In this document: positions 5,258-54,511 of the stretch, in pieces
How the letters are laid out: each line of letters starts with the position of its first letter
How positions within the stretch are numbered: position 1 is the first letter of the stretch
IMG/VR virus record: IMGVR_UViG_3300036715_004471
Coordinates: 1-64,000 of that record
Length of the DNA stretch: 64,000 nucleotides
Direction: 5' to 3' (one strand)
Made by a program: the position numbers and the translations under genes
Notes under the pieces: generated by a model
The model's input: only the letters and a program-made list of their open reading frames with translations
Database searches by the model: none
Told to the model about the DNA's origin: nothing

Positions 5258-6448
5258 TCACTGAGGCATCTTAGCTCTTAATTCCGTAGAACTAATATCC
5301 CACCTACCCGGAACATGAGTCAGCAGGTTATCCTCATATTTCTTCAACAACTCATATGAGGCAGAATCTTTGTTGATAATATCTGGTAAAGTGATGAAAT
5401 CATCCTTTACCAATCTACCAAGAACGAAAATCTTAGTATTTAACTTCGCCATCTCAGCCAAAAGCAGTTCTGGATCAATTCCCCACTTGGGATCCAGCAT
5501 AGTCATGAGTGTATCTGCACCCATACCAAACCAACCTCCAGGTTCACGACGAACCTTATCAATGAAAAGCGGGTCCCCAGAAGTAAGAAGAAAGTTTCTT
5601 CCTTTCATAGCATGAGCCCTTCCCAACATATCAGCCGGGGTTAAAGCAGCCTTGTGTGGAGGATCCATGACAGTTGTATAAACTGTATCTCTACATTCAC
5701 CAAATCTCTTAGCAATGGTTTGCCTAATAGCTTCGGCACCATCAGCATGACCAAAATGGAAAGGATTGAAACTACCAGGATAACGGAAGGTTTTAGTATC
5801 AATCGTAGACATACGAGTTCCGTTAGCATGGAACAGAGGCTTAGCTAGAATCAATTCCTTAGCTCGCTCAGTAGTGTCTAGTGGCGCGTACTTCCATGTA
5901 TTAGTTCCGTGTGCAAGGAAGTAATCTTCTGCTGCAAAATAATCCTTAAACCTAAAAGGAAGTGGCGTGACTGGCTCCCACAAACCAGCAGCATGTAGAA
6001 TCGCTGTTACACCAACCTCATCAGACAAGGTGCCATCTACCACTCTCTGAATTAACCCAGAGCCCTTTGGAATCTCCATCGCAAAAGTAAAGCATTCAGT
6101 ATTAGAGAAGGTAGAAACCATAACTCTATGCGCCCCCCTATGTTCGGACATGGATGCGACCGAAGCTGTCAAACCAACACCAATAGCTTTATGACCAGGC
6201 TCATAAGCCATTAGATACGCAGCCATTGCAAGCTCCATTGCAGTATCCGGTGATACGAACTTGTCAGGAGTAAATCCGATATATTTGCTTGTCAATTCAG
6301 TTGCATAAGGAAAACCGCAACCAACAAGAAAAGACGAGCACCCAGGCACTTCCCAGATTTTCTTTTGAATACCTGCACCTGCACCAGTACTATATACAAA
6401 AATACGAGGCGCCGCTGCGCCCATATCTCTCAGCTTTTCAATGCTCAT
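5258..6448 (-). CDS. CinA/PncC-like domain fused to HxGH nucleotidyltransferase (NadD/NMNAT-like)
   Basis: N-terminal TGAG..VPGCSSFL..A..MA..GVGLTA; C-terminal PGSFNPFHFGH, GADT, ISSTELR. Confidence 0.75.
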   Translation of the reverse strand: MSIEKLRDMGAAAPRIFVYSTGAGAGIQKKIWEVPGCSSFLVGCGFPYATELTSKYIGFTPDKFVSPDTAMELAMAAYLMAYEPGHKAIGVGLTASVASMSEHRGAHRVMVSTFSNTECFTFAMEIPKGSGLIQRVVDGTLSDEVGVTAILHAAGLWEPVTPLPFRFKDYFAAEDYFLAHGTNTWKYAPLDTTERAKELILAKPLFHANGTRMSTIDTKTFRYPGSFNPFHFGHADGAEAIRQTIAKRFGECRDTVYTTVMDPPHKAALTPADMLGRAHAMKGRNFLLTSGDPLFIDKVRREPGGWFGMGADTLMTMLDPKWGIDPELLLAEMAKLNTKIFVLGRLVKDDFITLPDIINKDSASYELLKKYEDNLLTHVPGRWDISSTELRAKMPQ

Positions 6449-11250: not shown

Positions 11251-11880
11251 CTATTTATTCTTTCGATTTTTTATTTCTTGTTTTATATCTTGCTTAAGTG
11301 CCTTGATAATATTCTCCGTCTGTGACAAAGAATATTCTTTCGAACCAGATGTATCAATAAAGAAATCACTTACCAATTTCTTATCTTCTAAAGACATCTG
11401 TGAGTTGATGCGATCCCAAGCTTCTTTTTGAGAAAGATTATTGCGTTTCACCAATCTTTCAACTTGAATGCTAGTCGGGCACCCCACCAAAATCAAGGGG
11501 CGGAATTTATCAGCCATTCCACGTTCGATAATAATGGCAGCATCATATCCAGCCATTTCAACTCCATTTTTAGATAGAAGATCGAACTGTTGTCTAGCAG
11601 CTTCTTCAATCAATGGGCTCATAATGGCAGTTACATGAGCTAATACTTCTTTTTGTGCAAAAGCCCACTTGCCAAAGTTAACACGATCCAATTTGCCATC
11701 CGGCAATAACCAGCGGCTTCCAAACTCTTCAATGAATGTTTTGAGACCAATGGAACCAGGCTCAATAACCTGTCTAGCCAAAAGGTCCGCATCAACCATA
11801 GGAACACCATGGTTTTTGAAAGTATTAGAAACAGTGCTCTTTCCAGAAGCAATTCCGCCGGTTAAGCCAAAGATAAGCAT
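11251..11880 (-). CDS. coaE: dephospho-CoA kinase
   Basis: GLTGGIASGKSTV, VDADLLAR, LDR, QVERLVKRN, RINSQM. Confidence 0.92.
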   Translation of the reverse strand: MLIFGLTGGIASGKSTVSNTFKNHGVPMVDADLLARQVIEPGSIGLKTFIEEFGSRWLLPDGKLDRVNFGKWAFAQKEVLAHVTAIMSPLIEEAARQQFDLLSKNGVEMAGYDAAIIIERGMADKFRPLILVGCPTSIQVERLVKRNNLSQKEAWDRINSQMSLEDKKLVSDFFIDTSGSKEYSLSQTENIIKALKQDIKQEIKNRKNK

Positions 11881-15217: not shown

Positions 15218-15231
15218 AAATCCTTTATAGG

Positions 15232-15303
15232 TGGTTCCAAAGGGAATCGAACCCTTATAGCCGGGGTTAGAATCCGGCGCCCTAGCCGTTGGACGATGGA
15301 ACC
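15232..15303 (-). tRNA. tRNA with CUA anticodon (amber suppressor type)
   Basis: GGTTCCA/TGGAACC acceptor, GTCC/GGGC D stem, CCGGA-TTCTAAC-CCCGG anticodon arm, AAGGG-TTCGATT-CCCTT T arm. Confidence 0.85.
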
Positions 15304-26071: not shown

Positions 26072-26359
26072 TCAAGCCGACTTCGGCGCTACTTCAATCA
26101 CCTTGCTAAGCAAACCGGGAGCCACGGTCCACTGCATACCTGCATCAGTTACCACCTTGGCGTTCTTGCGGTTAATGCCGAGGAACTTTCCACGAATGGT
26201 GCCGCGCTTGGACTCAAACTGCACAGTCTCTCCGAGGCGGAAAGACATGCCGTTCTCGGCGCCCAACTGATCAAATCGTAGCCTAACCATTGCATTCATT
26301 GCGGTCAGGTCTTCGCGAGAAGCAGTGCGGATCTAAGTCCTCACATCTTCAAAGGTCAC
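26072..26359 (-). CDS. SH3-like hypothetical protein with in-frame TAG at codon 9
   Basis: GTG overlapping upstream TGA, MTFEDVRT*IRTASREDLTA then the 75-aa ORF (FRLGETVQF..WTVAPGLL). Confidence 0.6.
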
Positions 26360-26580
26360 TTCGACACCCCATTCGCTTCCATCCACAGACGCATGCCCTC
26401 ATCCGTGGCATTGATCTCGGAAACGATCTCGAATCCGCGCCCAACCTCCACGTTCTCGTAGAAGCCGGTCTCTTCATCCTGAACCCAGCCGAAGTATACC
26501 TTGTCACGGGTCGCCGTAACAATCTTGTTCGTCTTCTCACCCGGCGCACTCATCTTACCAGTTATTGCACAACGAAACAT
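26356..26580 (-). CDS. hypothetical protein
   Basis: MFRCAITG..GFEIVSE; AGGA RBS. Confidence 0.65.
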   Translation of the reverse strand: MFRCAITGKMSAPGEKTNKIVTATRDKVYFGWVQDEETGFYENVEVGRGFEIVSEINATDEGMRLWMEANGVSK

Positions 26581-26638
26581 TTTTTTGTTTCCTATTCTAT
26601 CAATTATGATATATGTTTATGTAAGGAGTTACATAAAC

Positions 26639-27304
26639 ATGAAAAATTCAAAAGATACTTCTCAAGAAAGATTTTGGAAAAAAGTAACCAAAGCTTTGGA
26701 AAATGAATGTTGGCTTTGGACGGGATGTAAACAAGGCAGCAATGGTTACGGGTATTTCCGAATTAGTAAAGATGCTGGTAACCAAGTCGCTCACCGTTTT
26801 TCGTATGAACTTCACAAGGGGCAAATTCCGATGGGAATGATTGTTTGCCACACCTGCGATAACCCTATTTGCGTTAATCCTAATCATCTGTTTGTGGGAA
26901 CACATCAGGATAACGCCATCGACCGAGAATCAAAAAAAAGAAGTGATTATTCTAAAATCACTAAACTCACTGAAAAACAAGCTCAAGAAATTAAATCTTC
27001 TAATTTATCACAAAGTAGTTTATCCAAACTATATAAAGTAAGTAGAAGAACTATAGCTTCAATCCAATGCGGAGAGACGTGGAAGCACGTACGCACACAT
27101 ATTCAAGTAACTTCGTCTACCGAATATGTTTGTGTCGTTTGTAACAATTCATGTACAAAAACGATTTACAAAGATAATGGGTATAAATATCGAAAGATTC
27201 GTGATGATGTATGTTTGCGTTGCAATAAAGCTTTGGCTCTATTAAATAATGATTTACAAAATTTAATTAGAGCCAAAACCTATCTGGAGACTAATCTGGT
27301 TTAA
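26639..27304 (+). CDS. HNH homing endonuclease
   Basis: CWLWTG..GYG..AHRFSY..VCHTCDNPICVNPNHL; AAGGAG RBS. Confidence 0.9.
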   Translation: MKNSKDTSQERFWKKVTKALENECWLWTGCKQGSNGYGYFRISKDAGNQVAHRFSYELHKGQIPMGMIVCHTCDNPICVNPNHLFVGTHQDNAIDRESKKRSDYSKITKLTEKQAQEIKSSNLSQSSLSKLYKVSRRTIASIQCGETWKHVRTHIQVTSSTEYVCVVCNNSCTKTIYKDNGYKYRKIRDDVCLRCNKALALLNNDLQNLIRAKTYLETNLV

Positions 27305-27487: not shown

Positions 27488-28882
27488 TCAGTAGATGATT
27501 TTGTTTTCGAACTTGTGACTGCCGAACTTTTCGTTGATGGTACGCCACACATTTTTACCATCACCCTCCGAATGCTCAATCCATTTTCCATTCATGGTCC
27601 AAGCAGTGGTCATGTCGCCAAGGTCATTTACCAAGGTGCCGATACCATTTTGGAAAACATCCCAGATGATATCTCTTGCTTTTGCCGGGGGAATGTCGCT
27701 TGACAGATCAGGCACGCCAGCAGCTGCACCGCCATTGCAAATTGGCCAAGCCGCCTGAAACAACTTCATCATGATATCTTTGTTTCTATTCATGATGGCG
27801 CGAGACTTATCAACATCCAAATCCATCATACAGGAAATGACTTCATCTTCGGATGTGTCCCAGAATTTTCCAAGATCCTTCTTACCCAGAATGACACACT
27901 TGCGCGCAAAATCATACACCAAGTTAGCAACCATCGGATGAATTAACCAGGAATTACTCAGAGCATGATATTCAAGCCCTGAACCAGTGACCTTGTAATC
28001 ACCGGGCAGGCTTCCCAGTTTGCTGTAATCTGGATGATTATATCCGTTCAGCAAAGACACGCACGCGCATCCAAGCGTAGCATCCAACACTTTGGTGATC
28101 GATGATGCTCTCTCATCTGAGAGCCCGCGGAAATCATAAAGATGAAATTGAATTGCTCCACGAGCGGTACGATATCTGATCGTTTTAGCATCAGGGCACC
28201 TCGAACTTGCGCTATCAATTCTCTTGATACCGTAAGCGTTCTTAATATCTGAACCAATTCCAAACGCAAGAGTCTGAACGTCAGCCTCCGCAAGCTGCTT
28301 GTCAGACAAAACCATTACTGATTTGTTGGAGATTCTTGCCTTGGGATCAACCTTTCGAGCCGAGGCATACATGTCATGCAGTCCAAATGCCATCGAATCA
28401 ATGGCGCGGGCGAGGCAAACACAAGAGGCGGTCTGAACTGCACCGCCAAATCCAATGCGAGATGCTGTCACCTTACCATCATAACCCGGAGACTTAACCT
28501 GATCTTTCGCAATGAGAAACGTAGCGGGGACGCAAGCGCCATTCTCATCCTCCAAAAAGAATTCTCCCATAGCGGCATTGTCACCGTTATGATCTAATTC
28601 ATTGTGAAGATTCGAAAATCTATGTTTATCCCTAGCAGCAACGTGTTCAACCATTTCAGAGTCATCAAGAACGGTCAAGGCGGCGTCGTCAACAAGATAG
28701 TTGGCATACGACGTACCATCGAGGTACGTTACTGTCACGTAAATTTCATCGTGACCGTAATCTTGAATGGACGTAACCAAAACGGTATCATGGGCAAACT
28801 TACCTTTGTTCGCCAGCTTGACACCAATGTTGCGACGATTCTTAACCCAATCGTTCACCAACTCACGTGCGTTCGTAATCAT
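27488..28882 (-). CDS. degenerate phiEco32-like COOH-NH2 ligase paralog
   Basis: Aligns by eye to 62749..63993 (NAYG, LDATLGCACVSL, LPGDYK, LEYHALSNSWL) but lacks several catalytic residues. Confidence 0.75.
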   Translation of the reverse strand: MITNARELVNDWVKNRRNIGVKLANKGKFAHDTVLVTSIQDYGHDEIYVTVTYLDGTSYANYLVDDAALTVLDDSEMVEHVAARDKHRFSNLHNELDHNGDNAAMGEFFLEDENGACVPATFLIAKDQVKSPGYDGKVTASRIGFGGAVQTASCVCLARAIDSMAFGLHDMYASARKVDPKARISNKSVMVLSDKQLAEADVQTLAFGIGSDIKNAYGIKRIDSASSRCPDAKTIRYRTARGAIQFHLYDFRGLSDERASSITKVLDATLGCACVSLLNGYNHPDYSKLGSLPGDYKVTGSGLEYHALSNSWLIHPMVANLVYDFARKCVILGKKDLGKFWDTSEDEVISCMMDLDVDKSRAIMNRNKDIMMKLFQAAWPICNGGAAAGVPDLSSDIPPAKARDIIWDVFQNGIGTLVNDLGDMTTAWTMNGKWIEHSEGDGKNVWRTINEKFGSHKFENKIIY

Positions 28883-42196: not shown

Positions 42197-42739
42197 CTAT
42201 TCGTTGGGCGCCATCCACTTGATGATGATTCCAGCAACCATCTCTACCTCACTGAAATCGTTTAGGCAAACTTTGAGAACGCTCCCCGCGCTCATCATGC
42301 CGCACTTTGCGAACCAGTTGGTGGTCTGTTCGATGATTGCTAAACCTTCTGTCTCGAAGGTTAGCGGAGACAATGGACTTGATGGGTGCGCCAAGAACAC
42401 TACTCGATCATATACCGGATTAAAAAGCGTCAGGAAATCTCTGGGATTCCTAAAGCCTTCCAAAACATAATCGCCATCCTGAGCAAGCACGCCAGGATAA
42501 TTCTGACGAATATGATTGATGCAGTGGTTTGGATCTTCCGCTAGAAGACGCTGAGAGAACAACGTAATCTCTTCTAGGGTACGCTGTCTGTCTTCTATGG
42601 TCACTACAGGACCAGAAGGAACAAAGATGTTGCGTACCCAATCAGAAGCGGAAATCCTCGTGGCTTTCAACCCTGCCGCAACCTGGTTAGCAATGGGTGT
42701 CTTAGCGCTACGGGAAGGACCGATGATGTAGACGTTCAT
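42197..42739 (-). CDS. P-loop (NMP-kinase-like) protein
   Basis: IIGPSRSAKT, VLEGFR. Confidence 0.65.
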   Translation of the reverse strand: MNVYIIGPSRSAKTPIANQVAAGLKATRISASDWVRNIFVPSGPVVTIEDRQRTLEEITLFSQRLLAEDPNHCINHIRQNYPGVLAQDGDYVLEGFRNPRDFLTLFNPVYDRVVFLAHPSSPLSPLTFETEGLAIIEQTTNWFAKCGMMSAGSVLKVCLNDFSEVEMVAGIIIKWMAPNE

Positions 42740-54307: not shown

Positions 54308-54511
54308 CTACTCTTTCGGTCTGGGTCCAAAGCCAGCAAAACGTCCGCATTCATTACAACGAACATAAAGCCCGTCGTCCAATTTTTCTTTGTTATCGAA
54401 GTGCCCAAGACTAGGATTGAATACTTTATCTCCACGAACAACACATGCATGGTTGATCCACACATTGGTCATTTTAGCGTCACAGACGTGATAGATAAGA
54501 AAATCAGCCAT
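54308..54511 (-). CDS. hypothetical protein
   Basis: Likely start MADFLI; CNECG. Confidence 0.55.
   Translation of the reverse strand: MADFLIYHVCDAKMTNVWINHACVVRGDKVFNPSLGHFDNKEKLDDGLYVRCNECGRFAGFGPRPKE

What the first reader, a model, noticed from the sequence alone, without database searches (positions are those of the whole stretch)
26072..26359. Gene with in-frame TAG at codon 9: candidate client of the suppressor tRNA
Seen: a GTG at 26359 overlaps the upstream TGA (GTGA coupling, as elsewhere in this window) and reads MTFEDVRT-TAG-IRTASREDLTA straight into the annotated 75-aa ORF. The TAG is at 26333-26335. It could be a TGG-to-TAG nonsense change tolerated by suppression, or a readthrough switch.
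Basis: partly seen in the sequence, partly recalled or inferred. Interest (0 to 1): 0.6.

Follow-up and report, generated by a model that had tools for sequence, protein, structure and literature searches.

The report
Amber codon in conserved phage gene
A small, conserved gene of a 447-kb phage really does carry a TAG stop where its relatives have a tryptophan codon. The phage also carries two amber-suppressor tRNAs and its own release factor 2, so the gene may be made full-length only by read-through, but that is not proven.

Summary
On the minus strand, GTG 26359-26357 overlaps the TGA of the upstream 74-aa gene. The frame reads eight codons, then TAG (26335-26333), then eleven codons into the ATG (26299) of the 75-aa ORF. 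Contigs from two runs in different studies carry the same letters.

The upstream frame is real coding sequence. The nearest ortholog (80% identical) reads MTFEDVRT-W-IRGASREDL, with TGG at this codon, and two more distant relatives also have TGG. Codons 2-20 show 13 synonymous and 3 non-synonymous differences. Of 135 family members, 130 have their first residue at or before this start. None begins at the internal ATG, and the truncated ORF would lose the conserved D-L motif.

So this is a lineage-specific TGG-to-TAG nonsense change in a ~95-aa protein made of a helical hairpin and a small beta-barrel; its function is unknown.

The genome otherwise uses the standard code, and I found no other convincing in-frame TAG. 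TAG ends only about 4% of genes. The genome encodes two well-formed tRNA(CUA) genes and RF2.

Suppression is therefore plausible but untested (about 0.45). The main rival (about 0.4) is an unrescued young nonsense allele, possibly with re-initiation at ATG 26299. A conserved programmed switch is not supported.

The parts
26072..26359 (-). Full-length gene: 95 codons including the TAG, plus the TGA stop. It belongs to a family of ~90-aa phage proteins made of an N-terminal helical hairpin and an SH3/Tudor-like small beta-barrel.
   Evidence: Translation. Ortholog P0001, 80% identical. 479 relatives by HMMER. Alignments. AlphaFold model of the ortholog, pLDDT 91.7.
26357..26359 (-). GTG start codon overlapping the TGA stop (26356-26358) of the upstream gene. 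A G-rich Shine-Dalgarno-like GGGG lies 7 nt upstream. The ortholog has ATG here, with GGAG upstream.
   Evidence: The same overlap type is seen in L002 and L006 (ATGA) and in L007 (TAATG). In the MAFFT alignment, 115 of 135 family members have their first residue in this column.
26333..26335 (-). In-frame TAG at codon 9, followed by A. Relatives have TGG (Trp) here.
   Evidence: Contigs of two runs agree with the window.
26297..26299 (-). Internal ATG (codon 21), the start of the 75-aa ORF as listed. It is CTG (Leu) in the ortholog and has no Shine-Dalgarno-like motif upstream. It is a possible re-initiation site 33 nt after the TAG.
   Evidence: The family column is L/I/V, with M in 10 of 136 sequences.
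26356..26580 (-). Upstream 74-aa partner gene, translationally coupled to this gene. The pair is conserved in L002 and in L006 (48% identity).
15230..15303 (-). tRNA with anticodon CUA (amber suppressor no. 1). It has a standard cloverleaf, a Glu/Gln-like body, A73 and a 4-nt variable loop. A second tRNA(CUA) lies outside the window at G000 320811-320884.
   Evidence: ARAGORN. Rfam tRNA model, 55.5 and 61.9 bits. Similarity to other tRNAs.

Best explanation
SHOWN: the gene at 26072-26359 (minus strand) is a genuine member of a ~90-aa phage protein family whose members start at the codon that overlaps the upstream gene's stop. In this phage lineage a single G-to-A transition turned the Trp codon 9 (TGG) into TAG.

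INFERRED: the allele persists because the phage supplies its own amber-suppression machinery. This comprises two distinct tRNA(CUA) genes, one of them 11 kb away on the same strand, and a phage RF2. RF2 ends translation at TAA and TGA but not at TAG. TAG is also rarely used as a terminator in this genome.

Ribosomes starting at the coupled GTG would then insert an amino acid at codon 9 in a fraction of passes and make the full 95-aa protein. The identity of that amino acid is unresolved; Glu/Gln or Lys-type tRNA bodies are the leads. The rest terminate after 8 residues, and some may re-initiate at ATG 26299 to give a 75-aa product lacking helix 1.

On this reading it is a single suppressor-dependent gene in an otherwise standard-code genome. 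That matches the intermediate state predicted by the published model for how phages drift into TAG recoding.
For: - The TAG is real in two runs.
- TGG occupies the same codon in three relatives, and the flanking residues are identical (MTFEDVRT / IR.ASREDL).
- Codons 2-20 show 13 synonymous against 3 non-synonymous differences (dN 0.08). Codons 21-90 have dN 0.107 and omega 0.075. My rough Poisson estimate from these counts: if the N-terminal piece had evolved neutrally for more than about 20% of the divergence, 6-9 extra replacements would be expected.
- The downstream 86 codons are intact.
- 126 or more of the 136 aligned sequences occupy each of columns 1-20, with conserved I10, S/T14, E/D16, D/E17 (123 of 136) and L18 (99 of 136). 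None starts at codon 21.
- Both tRNA(CUA) genes score like the genome's other tRNAs (55.5 and 61.9 bits, against 51.8-56.7).
- The anticodon arm of tRNA no. 2 recurs letter for letter in tRNA(CUA) genes of two other large phage contigs that have different acceptor stems. This points to selection for UAG decoding.
- RF2 is present, with SPF and GGQ motifs.
- TAG ends 21 of 480 crude genes, and 13 of 416 on the main strand.
- The column of codon 9 naturally holds A, L, W, F, E and V, so most inserted residues should be tolerated.
- The published model holds that in-frame stops accumulate after a suppressor tRNA is acquired (bioRxiv 10.1101/2021.08.26.457843).
Against: - There is no direct evidence of read-through: no RNA or protein data, and only contigs rather than reads.
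- This is the only convincing in-frame TAG in 446 kb, so the suppressors clearly do not exist to serve many such genes.
- TAG still works as a terminator, followed by clear ribosome-binding sites and next genes. Suppression therefore cannot be near-complete.
- The start is GTG where the ortholog has ATG. GTG-coupled starts are rare here (4, against 45 ATG). Two weakening A/G changes in one small gene also fit early decay.
- The low dN is equally explained by a very recent mutation.
- The amino acid carried by either tRNA could not be assigned.
Confidence: 0.45

Rival explanations
1. Unrescued young nonsense allele. The TGG-to-TAG change simply truncates translation. Either the gene is a recent pseudogene of a dispensable accessory protein, or it is expressed as a 75-aa N-terminally truncated product. 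That product would arise by re-initiation at ATG 26299, 33 nt after the stop, by ribosomes that have just terminated.
For: - TAG is a working terminator elsewhere in this genome.
- No other in-frame TAG clients were found.
- The start is weakened from ATG to GTG.
- Codon 21 is ATG here but CTG in the ortholog, which offers a nearby restart codon.
- Re-initiation after early nonsense codons is established bacterial and phage genetics (my own knowledge, not tested here).
- Low dN is compatible with a recent event.
Against: - The truncated product would lack helix 1 and the start of helix 2, including the family's best conserved N-terminal motif (D17-L18). No family member has that shape.
- ATG 26299 has no Shine-Dalgarno-like motif.
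- M at codon 21 occurs naturally in 10 of 136 relatives, so it need not be compensatory.
- The rest of the gene is intact and the allele occurs in two samples.
- The genome carries exactly the machinery that would mask an amber mutation.
Confidence: 0.4
2. Programmed, regulated read-through switch. The TAG is an adaptive device that ties synthesis of this protein to the time when the suppressor tRNAs and RF2 are expressed, as proposed for late and lysis genes of TAG-recoded phages.
For: The toolkit of suppressor tRNAs plus RF2 matches the 'code-change' genes described for recoded phages. TAG is followed by A, a context reported to favour suppression in E. coli (my own knowledge).
Against: The stop is not conserved: all three relatives examined have TGG. 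Only one gene is affected. The gene lies among small early-type accessory genes, not in a lysis or structural block. No regulatory logic is evident.
Confidence: 0.08
3. Artefact or chance. Either the TAG is a sequencing or assembly error for TGG, or the upstream frame is non-coding and the true gene is the 75-aa ORF.
For: Depth is modest (contig depths 9 and 4.8). The bare sequence pattern occurs by chance at similar rates for all three stops.
Against: Identical letters occur in contigs from two studies. The upstream frame is conserved with a 13:3 synonymous to non-synonymous ratio and matches the N-terminus of the whole family.
Confidence: 0.04

Closest known systems
TAG-recoded phages (genetic code 15 type: crAss-like, Lak, Agate and others) with phage-encoded suppressor tRNA and RF2
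   Same: This phage carries tRNA(CUA) genes and a phage-encoded RF2, uses few TAG terminators, has a low-GC genome (38.7%), and has an in-frame TAG in a conserved gene (literature).
   Different: The genome here is standard-coded. ORFs of at least 80 aa cover 95% of it under code 11, and no region has low coverage except the tRNA array. Only one supported in-frame TAG was found. That TAG replaces Trp, not the Gln reported for recoded phages. TAG still terminates genes.
Standard-code relatives of recoded phages that have acquired a suppressor tRNA (the proposed precursor state in bioRxiv 10.1101/2021.08.26.457843)
   Same: A standard code, a depleted stop codon and acquired suppressor tRNAs. 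The model predicts that in-frame stops then start to accumulate.
   Different: That paper describes a TGA suppressor in a standard-code Agate phage from gut samples. Here there are two different TAG suppressors plus RF2, in a 447-kb phage from mat and sediment samples, with a concrete first in-frame TAG.
Classical amber mutants rescued by informational suppressors (e.g. T4 psu tRNAs, E. coli supE/supF)
   Same: A one-step change from a sense codon to TAG, and a suppressor tRNA one anticodon step from a normal tRNA, encoded in the same genome.
   Different: This is a natural allele found in metagenomes, not a laboratory mutant, and suppression was not demonstrated. The comparison rests on my own knowledge of the classical systems.
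Small viral proteins with a Tudor/SH3-like barrel (weak similarity to Pfam Phage_ProQ_C_like, MS_channel_2nd beta-domain, DUF7205 clusters)
   Same: The model has two helices followed by a five-strand small barrel. The family is found almost only in viruses.
   Different: No Pfam family reaches its threshold. Foldseek matches are weak (best E 2e-3). Function is unknown.

Membership tests
TAG-recoded phage genome (code 15-like) | Many in-frame TAG codons in conserved genes; low coding density under the standard code | tested here: not met
   Standard-code ORFs cover 90-95% of the genome. Coding-TAG-coding junctions number 1-4, against 25-45 for TAA and TGA, and all those inspected are adjacent genes.
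TAG-recoded phage genome (code 15-like) | Phage-encoded tRNA with anticodon CUA | tested here: met
   There are two, at 15230-15303 and at G000 320811-320884. They score 55.5 and 61.9 bits on the Rfam tRNA model.
TAG-recoded phage genome (code 15-like) | Accessory: phage RF2, and depletion of TAG as a terminator | tested here: met
   prfB model 417 bits (cut-off 370), with SPF and GGQ motifs. TAG ends 21 of 480 crude genes.
Suppressor-rescued amber allele (informational suppression) | Relatives carry a sense codon one step from TAG at the same position in a conserved frame | tested here: met
   TGG in L002, L006 and L007. Purifying selection on both sides of the codon.
Suppressor-rescued amber allele (informational suppression) | The full-length protein is actually produced, with an amino acid at the TAG | not testable with these tools
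   No RNA run or raw reads are available, and there is no proteome.
Programmed stop-codon read-through | The stop codon is conserved among relatives | tested here: not met
   All three relatives with DNA in hand have TGG. All 135 family proteins were called as uninterrupted ORFs.
Pyrrolysine decoding (ARAGORN labels both tRNAs 'tRNA-Pyl') | PylS synthetase and the atypical tRNA-Pyl architecture | tested here: not met
   The genome has no PylS_Cterm match. Both tRNAs fit the standard tRNA model end to end, with a 5-bp anticodon stem. The label only reflects the CUA anticodon.
~90-aa phage protein family (helical hairpin + small barrel; no Pfam name) | Profile match over the full length, including the N-terminal helix | tested here: met
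   479 relatives at E of 1e-3 or better. The 20 upstream codons align to the family N-terminus. No Pfam family is above its cut-off.

The most novel reading that the evidence does not exclude
This phage is caught at the very first step of stop-codon capture. The genome is still standard-coded but has already assembled the amber-decoding toolkit: two unrelated tRNA(CUA) genes, RF2 and few TAG terminators. One conserved gene now depends on TAG being read as an amino acid, at a Trp position rather than the Gln positions known from recoded phages. If so, it would be a natural 'ambiguous intermediate', in which the identity of the inserted residue and the cost of read-through at the remaining TAG terminators can be measured.
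Probability: 0.3. Interest if true: 0.65.

Novelty: new member of a known kind. Interest (0 to 1): 0.5.

Why it matters
Models of genetic-code change in phages propose an order of events. A stop codon becomes rare, a suppressor tRNA is acquired, and in-frame stops then accumulate. Examples of the intermediate stage are scarce. This locus offers a concrete, testable case, with one gene, one codon, a known ancestral residue (Trp) and two candidate suppressor tRNAs in the same genome.

There is also a practical point. Standard annotation gives a 75-aa ORF that lacks a conserved part of the protein. If the TAG turns out not to be suppressed, this is simply a fresh nonsense allele of a small accessory gene and of little wider interest.

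Tried and rejected
- **Genome-wide TAG recoding: rejected.** ORF coverage, codon-usage scoring of both sides of every stop, a composition-independent ORF-dominance test and a scan for low-coverage regions all argue against it. The few TAG junctions are neighbouring genes with their own ribosome-binding sites or starts: 11253 (CoaE-like), 42199, 54310 and 374788-375333. The 261124-261930 hit is an antisense low-complexity frame.
- **Other N-terminal TAG clients: none convincing.** Four weak candidates turned up (starts near 5261, 309608, 335055 and 389553). They have no coding signal, and they occur at the same rate as the TAA and TGA controls.
- **Tandem-stop back-up after TAG terminators:** too few genes (13) to say anything.
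- **More close orthologs:** scans of viral contigs and metagenome contigs with the alignment found none. The word-based protein search found only one ortholog cluster.
- **tRNA isotype: not resolved.**
  - tRNA no. 1 is nearest to tRNA-Glu. Its best annotated match is Myxococcus phage Mx1 tRNA-Glu at 78.6%, and it resembles the phage's own tRNA-Glu(CUC). It has no E. coli match.
  - tRNA no. 2 has a Lys/Arg/Ile-like body.
  - The anticodon arm of tRNA no. 2 differs at 1 of 14 positions from the phage's own tRNA-Trp. I first read this as Trp ancestry. However, the same arm occurs in suppressors with unrelated acceptor stems, so it may reflect selection on the anticodon arm for reading U-starting codons.
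- **Dedicated synthetase:** only a TyrRS is encoded. There is no GlnRS/GluRS, TrpRS, LysRS or PylS.
- **Function of the protein:** Pfam, PHROGs, Foldseek against PDB and the Atlas give only generic small-barrel similarities.
- **Toolkit in relatives:** searching the relatives' whole records for RF2 and suppressor tRNAs was not possible because the records are not held.
- **Alternative codes:** no alternative genetic code was applied in any tool.

Full report
**Setting.** The window is the first 64 kb of a 446,541-bp virus record. The genome has 38.7% G+C and 56 tRNA genes, all on the minus strand, and most genes are on the minus strand too. No close relative exists in the GenBank phage collection.

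**The observation.** On the minus strand the 74-aa ORF 26356-26580 ends in TGA (26358-26356). GTG 26359-26357 overlaps that stop. The frame then reads V/M-T-F-E-D-V-R-T, TAG (26335-26333), I-R-T-A-S-R-E-D-L-T-A and ATG 26299, the start of the 75-aa ORF that ends at 26072.

Logan contigs from two runs in two different studies cover the TAG with no differing letter. One is a microbial mat run (a 2,740-bp contig covering 25380-28000). The other is a sediment run (a 967-bp contig covering 25901-26867). The first may be the source sample. Contigs cannot show minor alleles, but an assembly slip is unlikely.

**Is the pattern more than chance?** By itself, no. In this genome 29 of 33 GTGA overlaps open fewer than 50 codons, whereas 45 of 77 ATGA overlaps open 50 or more. 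The generalised pattern is 'a start within a few bases of an upstream stop, a short frame, one stop, then a long ORF'. It is found for 6 genes with TAG, 6 with TAA and 4 with TGA, in proportion to how often each stop closes such short frames. The case rests on comparison with relatives.

**Relatives.**
- The word-based protein search found one ortholog cluster, P0001 (80% identity), on a 15.7-kb JGI contig, L002.
- L002 is syntenic with the window. Both carry the 464-aa, 74-aa, this gene, 61/66-aa, 91-aa and 112/110-aa genes in the same order.
- In L002 the gene starts with ATG in an ATGA overlap with the upstream stop. It reads MTFEDVRT-W-IRGASREDLAAL, so the window's TAG aligns with TGG.
- Codon by codon, positions 2-20 show 13 synonymous and 3 non-synonymous differences (dN 0.08, synonymous sites saturated). 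Codons 21-90 have dN 0.107 and omega 0.075.
- The upstream 20 codons have therefore been under the same purifying selection as the rest of the gene for nearly all of the divergence. My rough Poisson estimate from these counts: neutral evolution of this piece for more than about a fifth of the divergence would have added 6-9 replacements.

**The wider family.** An exhaustive HMMER search found 479 relatives at E of 1e-3 or better, most of them 88-100 aa long.
- In a 136-sequence alignment, 115 of the 135 relatives have their first residue in the start column. At least 126 sequences occupy every one of columns 1-20.
- The N-terminal part holds conserved positions: I/L/V10, S/T14, E/D16, D/E17 in 123 of 136, and L18 in 99 of 136. 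No member begins at the position of ATG 26299.
- Two further relatives for which I read DNA also have TGG at the codon. L006 has an ATGA overlap and an upstream partner 48% identical to the 74-aa protein. L007 has a TAATG overlap.
- The column of codon 9 holds A, L, W, F, E and V across the family.

The refutation test 'orthologs begin at the downstream ATG with no conserved upstream frame' is therefore clearly failed.

**The protein.** No Pfam or PHROG family reaches threshold. An AlphaFold model of the intact ortholog has pLDDT 91.7. It shows helix 3-12 (which holds W9), helix 15-37, and then a small beta-barrel at 45-79. Foldseek gives only weak Tudor/SH3-like and MscS beta-domain matches. 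Atlas neighbours are viral hypothetical proteins, some carrying DUF7205. Function is unknown. A product starting at codon 21 would lack helix 1 and the first part of helix 2.

**The genome's code.** The genome uses the standard code.
- ORFs of at least 80 aa cover 95% of it. The only low-coverage stretch is the tRNA array at 414-428 kb.
- Tests for coding sequence on both sides of a stop find 1-4 TAG cases, against 25-45 for TAA or TGA.
- The TAG cases I inspected are neighbouring genes with their own starts: a CoaE-like gene ending at 11253, and genes ending at 42199 and 54310.
- TAG therefore still terminates genes, but rarely. It ends 21 of 480 crude genes, and 13 of 416 on the main strand.
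- I found no second convincing in-frame TAG.

**The suppression toolkit.** Two tRNA genes have anticodon CUA, at 15230-15303 in the window and at G000 320811-320884.
- Both fit the Rfam tRNA model end to end (55.5 and 61.9 bits; neighbouring tRNAs score 51.8-56.7). Each has one non-standard 31-39 pair.
- ARAGORN's 'tRNA-Pyl' label only reflects the anticodon, and no PylS is encoded.
- The first tRNA has a Glu/Gln-like body: A73, a 4-nt variable loop, and nearest matches to the phage's own tRNA-Glu(CUC) and to tRNA-Glu of Myxococcus phage Mx1.
- The second has a Lys/Arg/Ile-like body. Its anticodon arm differs at only 1 of 14 non-anticodon positions from the phage's own tRNA-Trp(CCA).
- That same arm recurs letter for letter in tRNA(CUA) genes of two other large phage contigs with quite different acceptor stems. 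I read this as selection on the arm for UAG decoding rather than proof of Trp identity.
- The inserted amino acid therefore stays open.
- The genome also encodes RF2 (prfB model 417 bits against a cut-off of 370, with SPF and GGQ motifs) and a TyrRS. It encodes no GlnRS/GluRS, TrpRS or LysRS.
- RF2 together with suppressor tRNAs is the combination reported for TAG-recoded Lak and Agate phages. Release factors are also known more generally from huge phages.

**Interpretation.** What is shown is a real, lineage-specific TGG-to-TAG nonsense change at codon 9 of a conserved, translationally coupled ~95-aa gene. The genome that carries it also has amber-suppressor tRNAs and RF2.

What is inferred is that suppression keeps the gene in use.
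- In favour: the toolkit is present, the rest of the gene is intact, dN in the N-terminal piece is low, the column of codon 9 is tolerant, and the allele occurs in two samples.
- Against: there is no expression evidence. This is the only such gene. TAG still terminates other genes. The start is GTG where the ortholog has ATG, a second weakening change that also fits early decay. A recent mutation would explain the low dN equally well.

Ribosomes that stop at codon 9 could re-initiate at ATG 26299, which is CTG in the ortholog. That would give a truncated protein unlike any family member.

I put suppression-dependent expression at about 0.45, an unrescued young allele (truncated product or pseudogene) at about 0.4, a programmed switch at under 0.1, and artefact at a few percent.

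**Relation to what is known.** This works like a classical amber mutant in a suppressor background. It matches the intermediate stage proposed for the origin of TAG recoding in phages: stop-codon depletion, then acquisition of a suppressor, then accumulation of in-frame stops. It is not a member of the recoded-genome class, because the defining feature of many in-frame TAGs was tested and not met. It is not programmed read-through either, because the stop is not conserved. I rate it a new member of a known kind, of moderate interest. It would rise if read-through were shown and fall to ordinary if not.

**Limits.** Only contigs, not reads, were available. There is only one close ortholog. My gene lists are crude ORF and codon-usage calls, not a trained gene finder. 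The whole records of the relatives could not be searched for the toolkit. No alternative genetic code was applied in any tool.

Noticed in passing
window 26636-27304 (+ strand; ORF as listed 26501-27304): An HNH homing-endonuclease gene (Pfam HNH_3 5.8e-11; PHROG endonuclease 1.8e-36), with a C-terminal endonuclease VII-like piece. It sits between the 464-aa gene and the 74-aa gene, on the opposite strand. The syntenic relative L002 has only a 23-nt spacer there, so this is a free-standing insertion about 300 bp from the TAG.
   Followed up: partly
window 26072-26580: The two-gene pair (74-aa gene plus this gene) has about 54% G+C, against about 35-45% around it and 38.7% genome-wide. The pair is conserved in L002 and L006. 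It may be a horizontally acquired module.
   Followed up: partly
G000 131157-132305 (- strand; L005:1414-2562): A phage-encoded release factor 2 (prfB 417 bits; SPF and GGQ motifs), in one open frame without the usual +1 frameshift site.
   Followed up: partly
G000 355457-356701 (L004:1222-2466) and G000 426450-426524: A phage-encoded tyrosyl-tRNA synthetase (tyrS 383 bits). The phage's tRNA-Tyr(GUA) has a short variable loop, unlike the long-arm bacterial type. Whether the TyrRS could also charge a CUA tRNA was not tested.
   Followed up: no
G000 320811-320884 (L003:1002-1074); L010:88-164; L012:8661-8734: The second tRNA(CUA) has a 17-nt anticodon arm that is identical in suppressor tRNAs of two other large phage contigs (320 kb and 170 kb) with different acceptor stems. 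The arm is one base from that of the phage's own tRNA-Trp.
   Followed up: partly
window 11251-11253, 42197-42199, 54308-54310 (- strand): These TAG terminators are each followed in the same frame by the next gene. The first of them ends a CoaE-like kinase gene. Any efficient amber suppression would fuse these neighbouring proteins, which gives a built-in read-out of suppression strength.
   Followed up: partly
window 27488-28882 (- strand): A 464-aa protein with weak similarity to a PHROG 'COOH.NH2 ligase' family. In L002, nearby genes carry faint Amidoligase_2, LysM and GATase hits.
   Followed up: no
window 26693: A short (about 31-nt) stretch inside the HNH gene matches much deeper contigs of other organisms in three runs, with one base missing. 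It is probably a shared HNH motif, not a variant of this phage.
   Followed up: no
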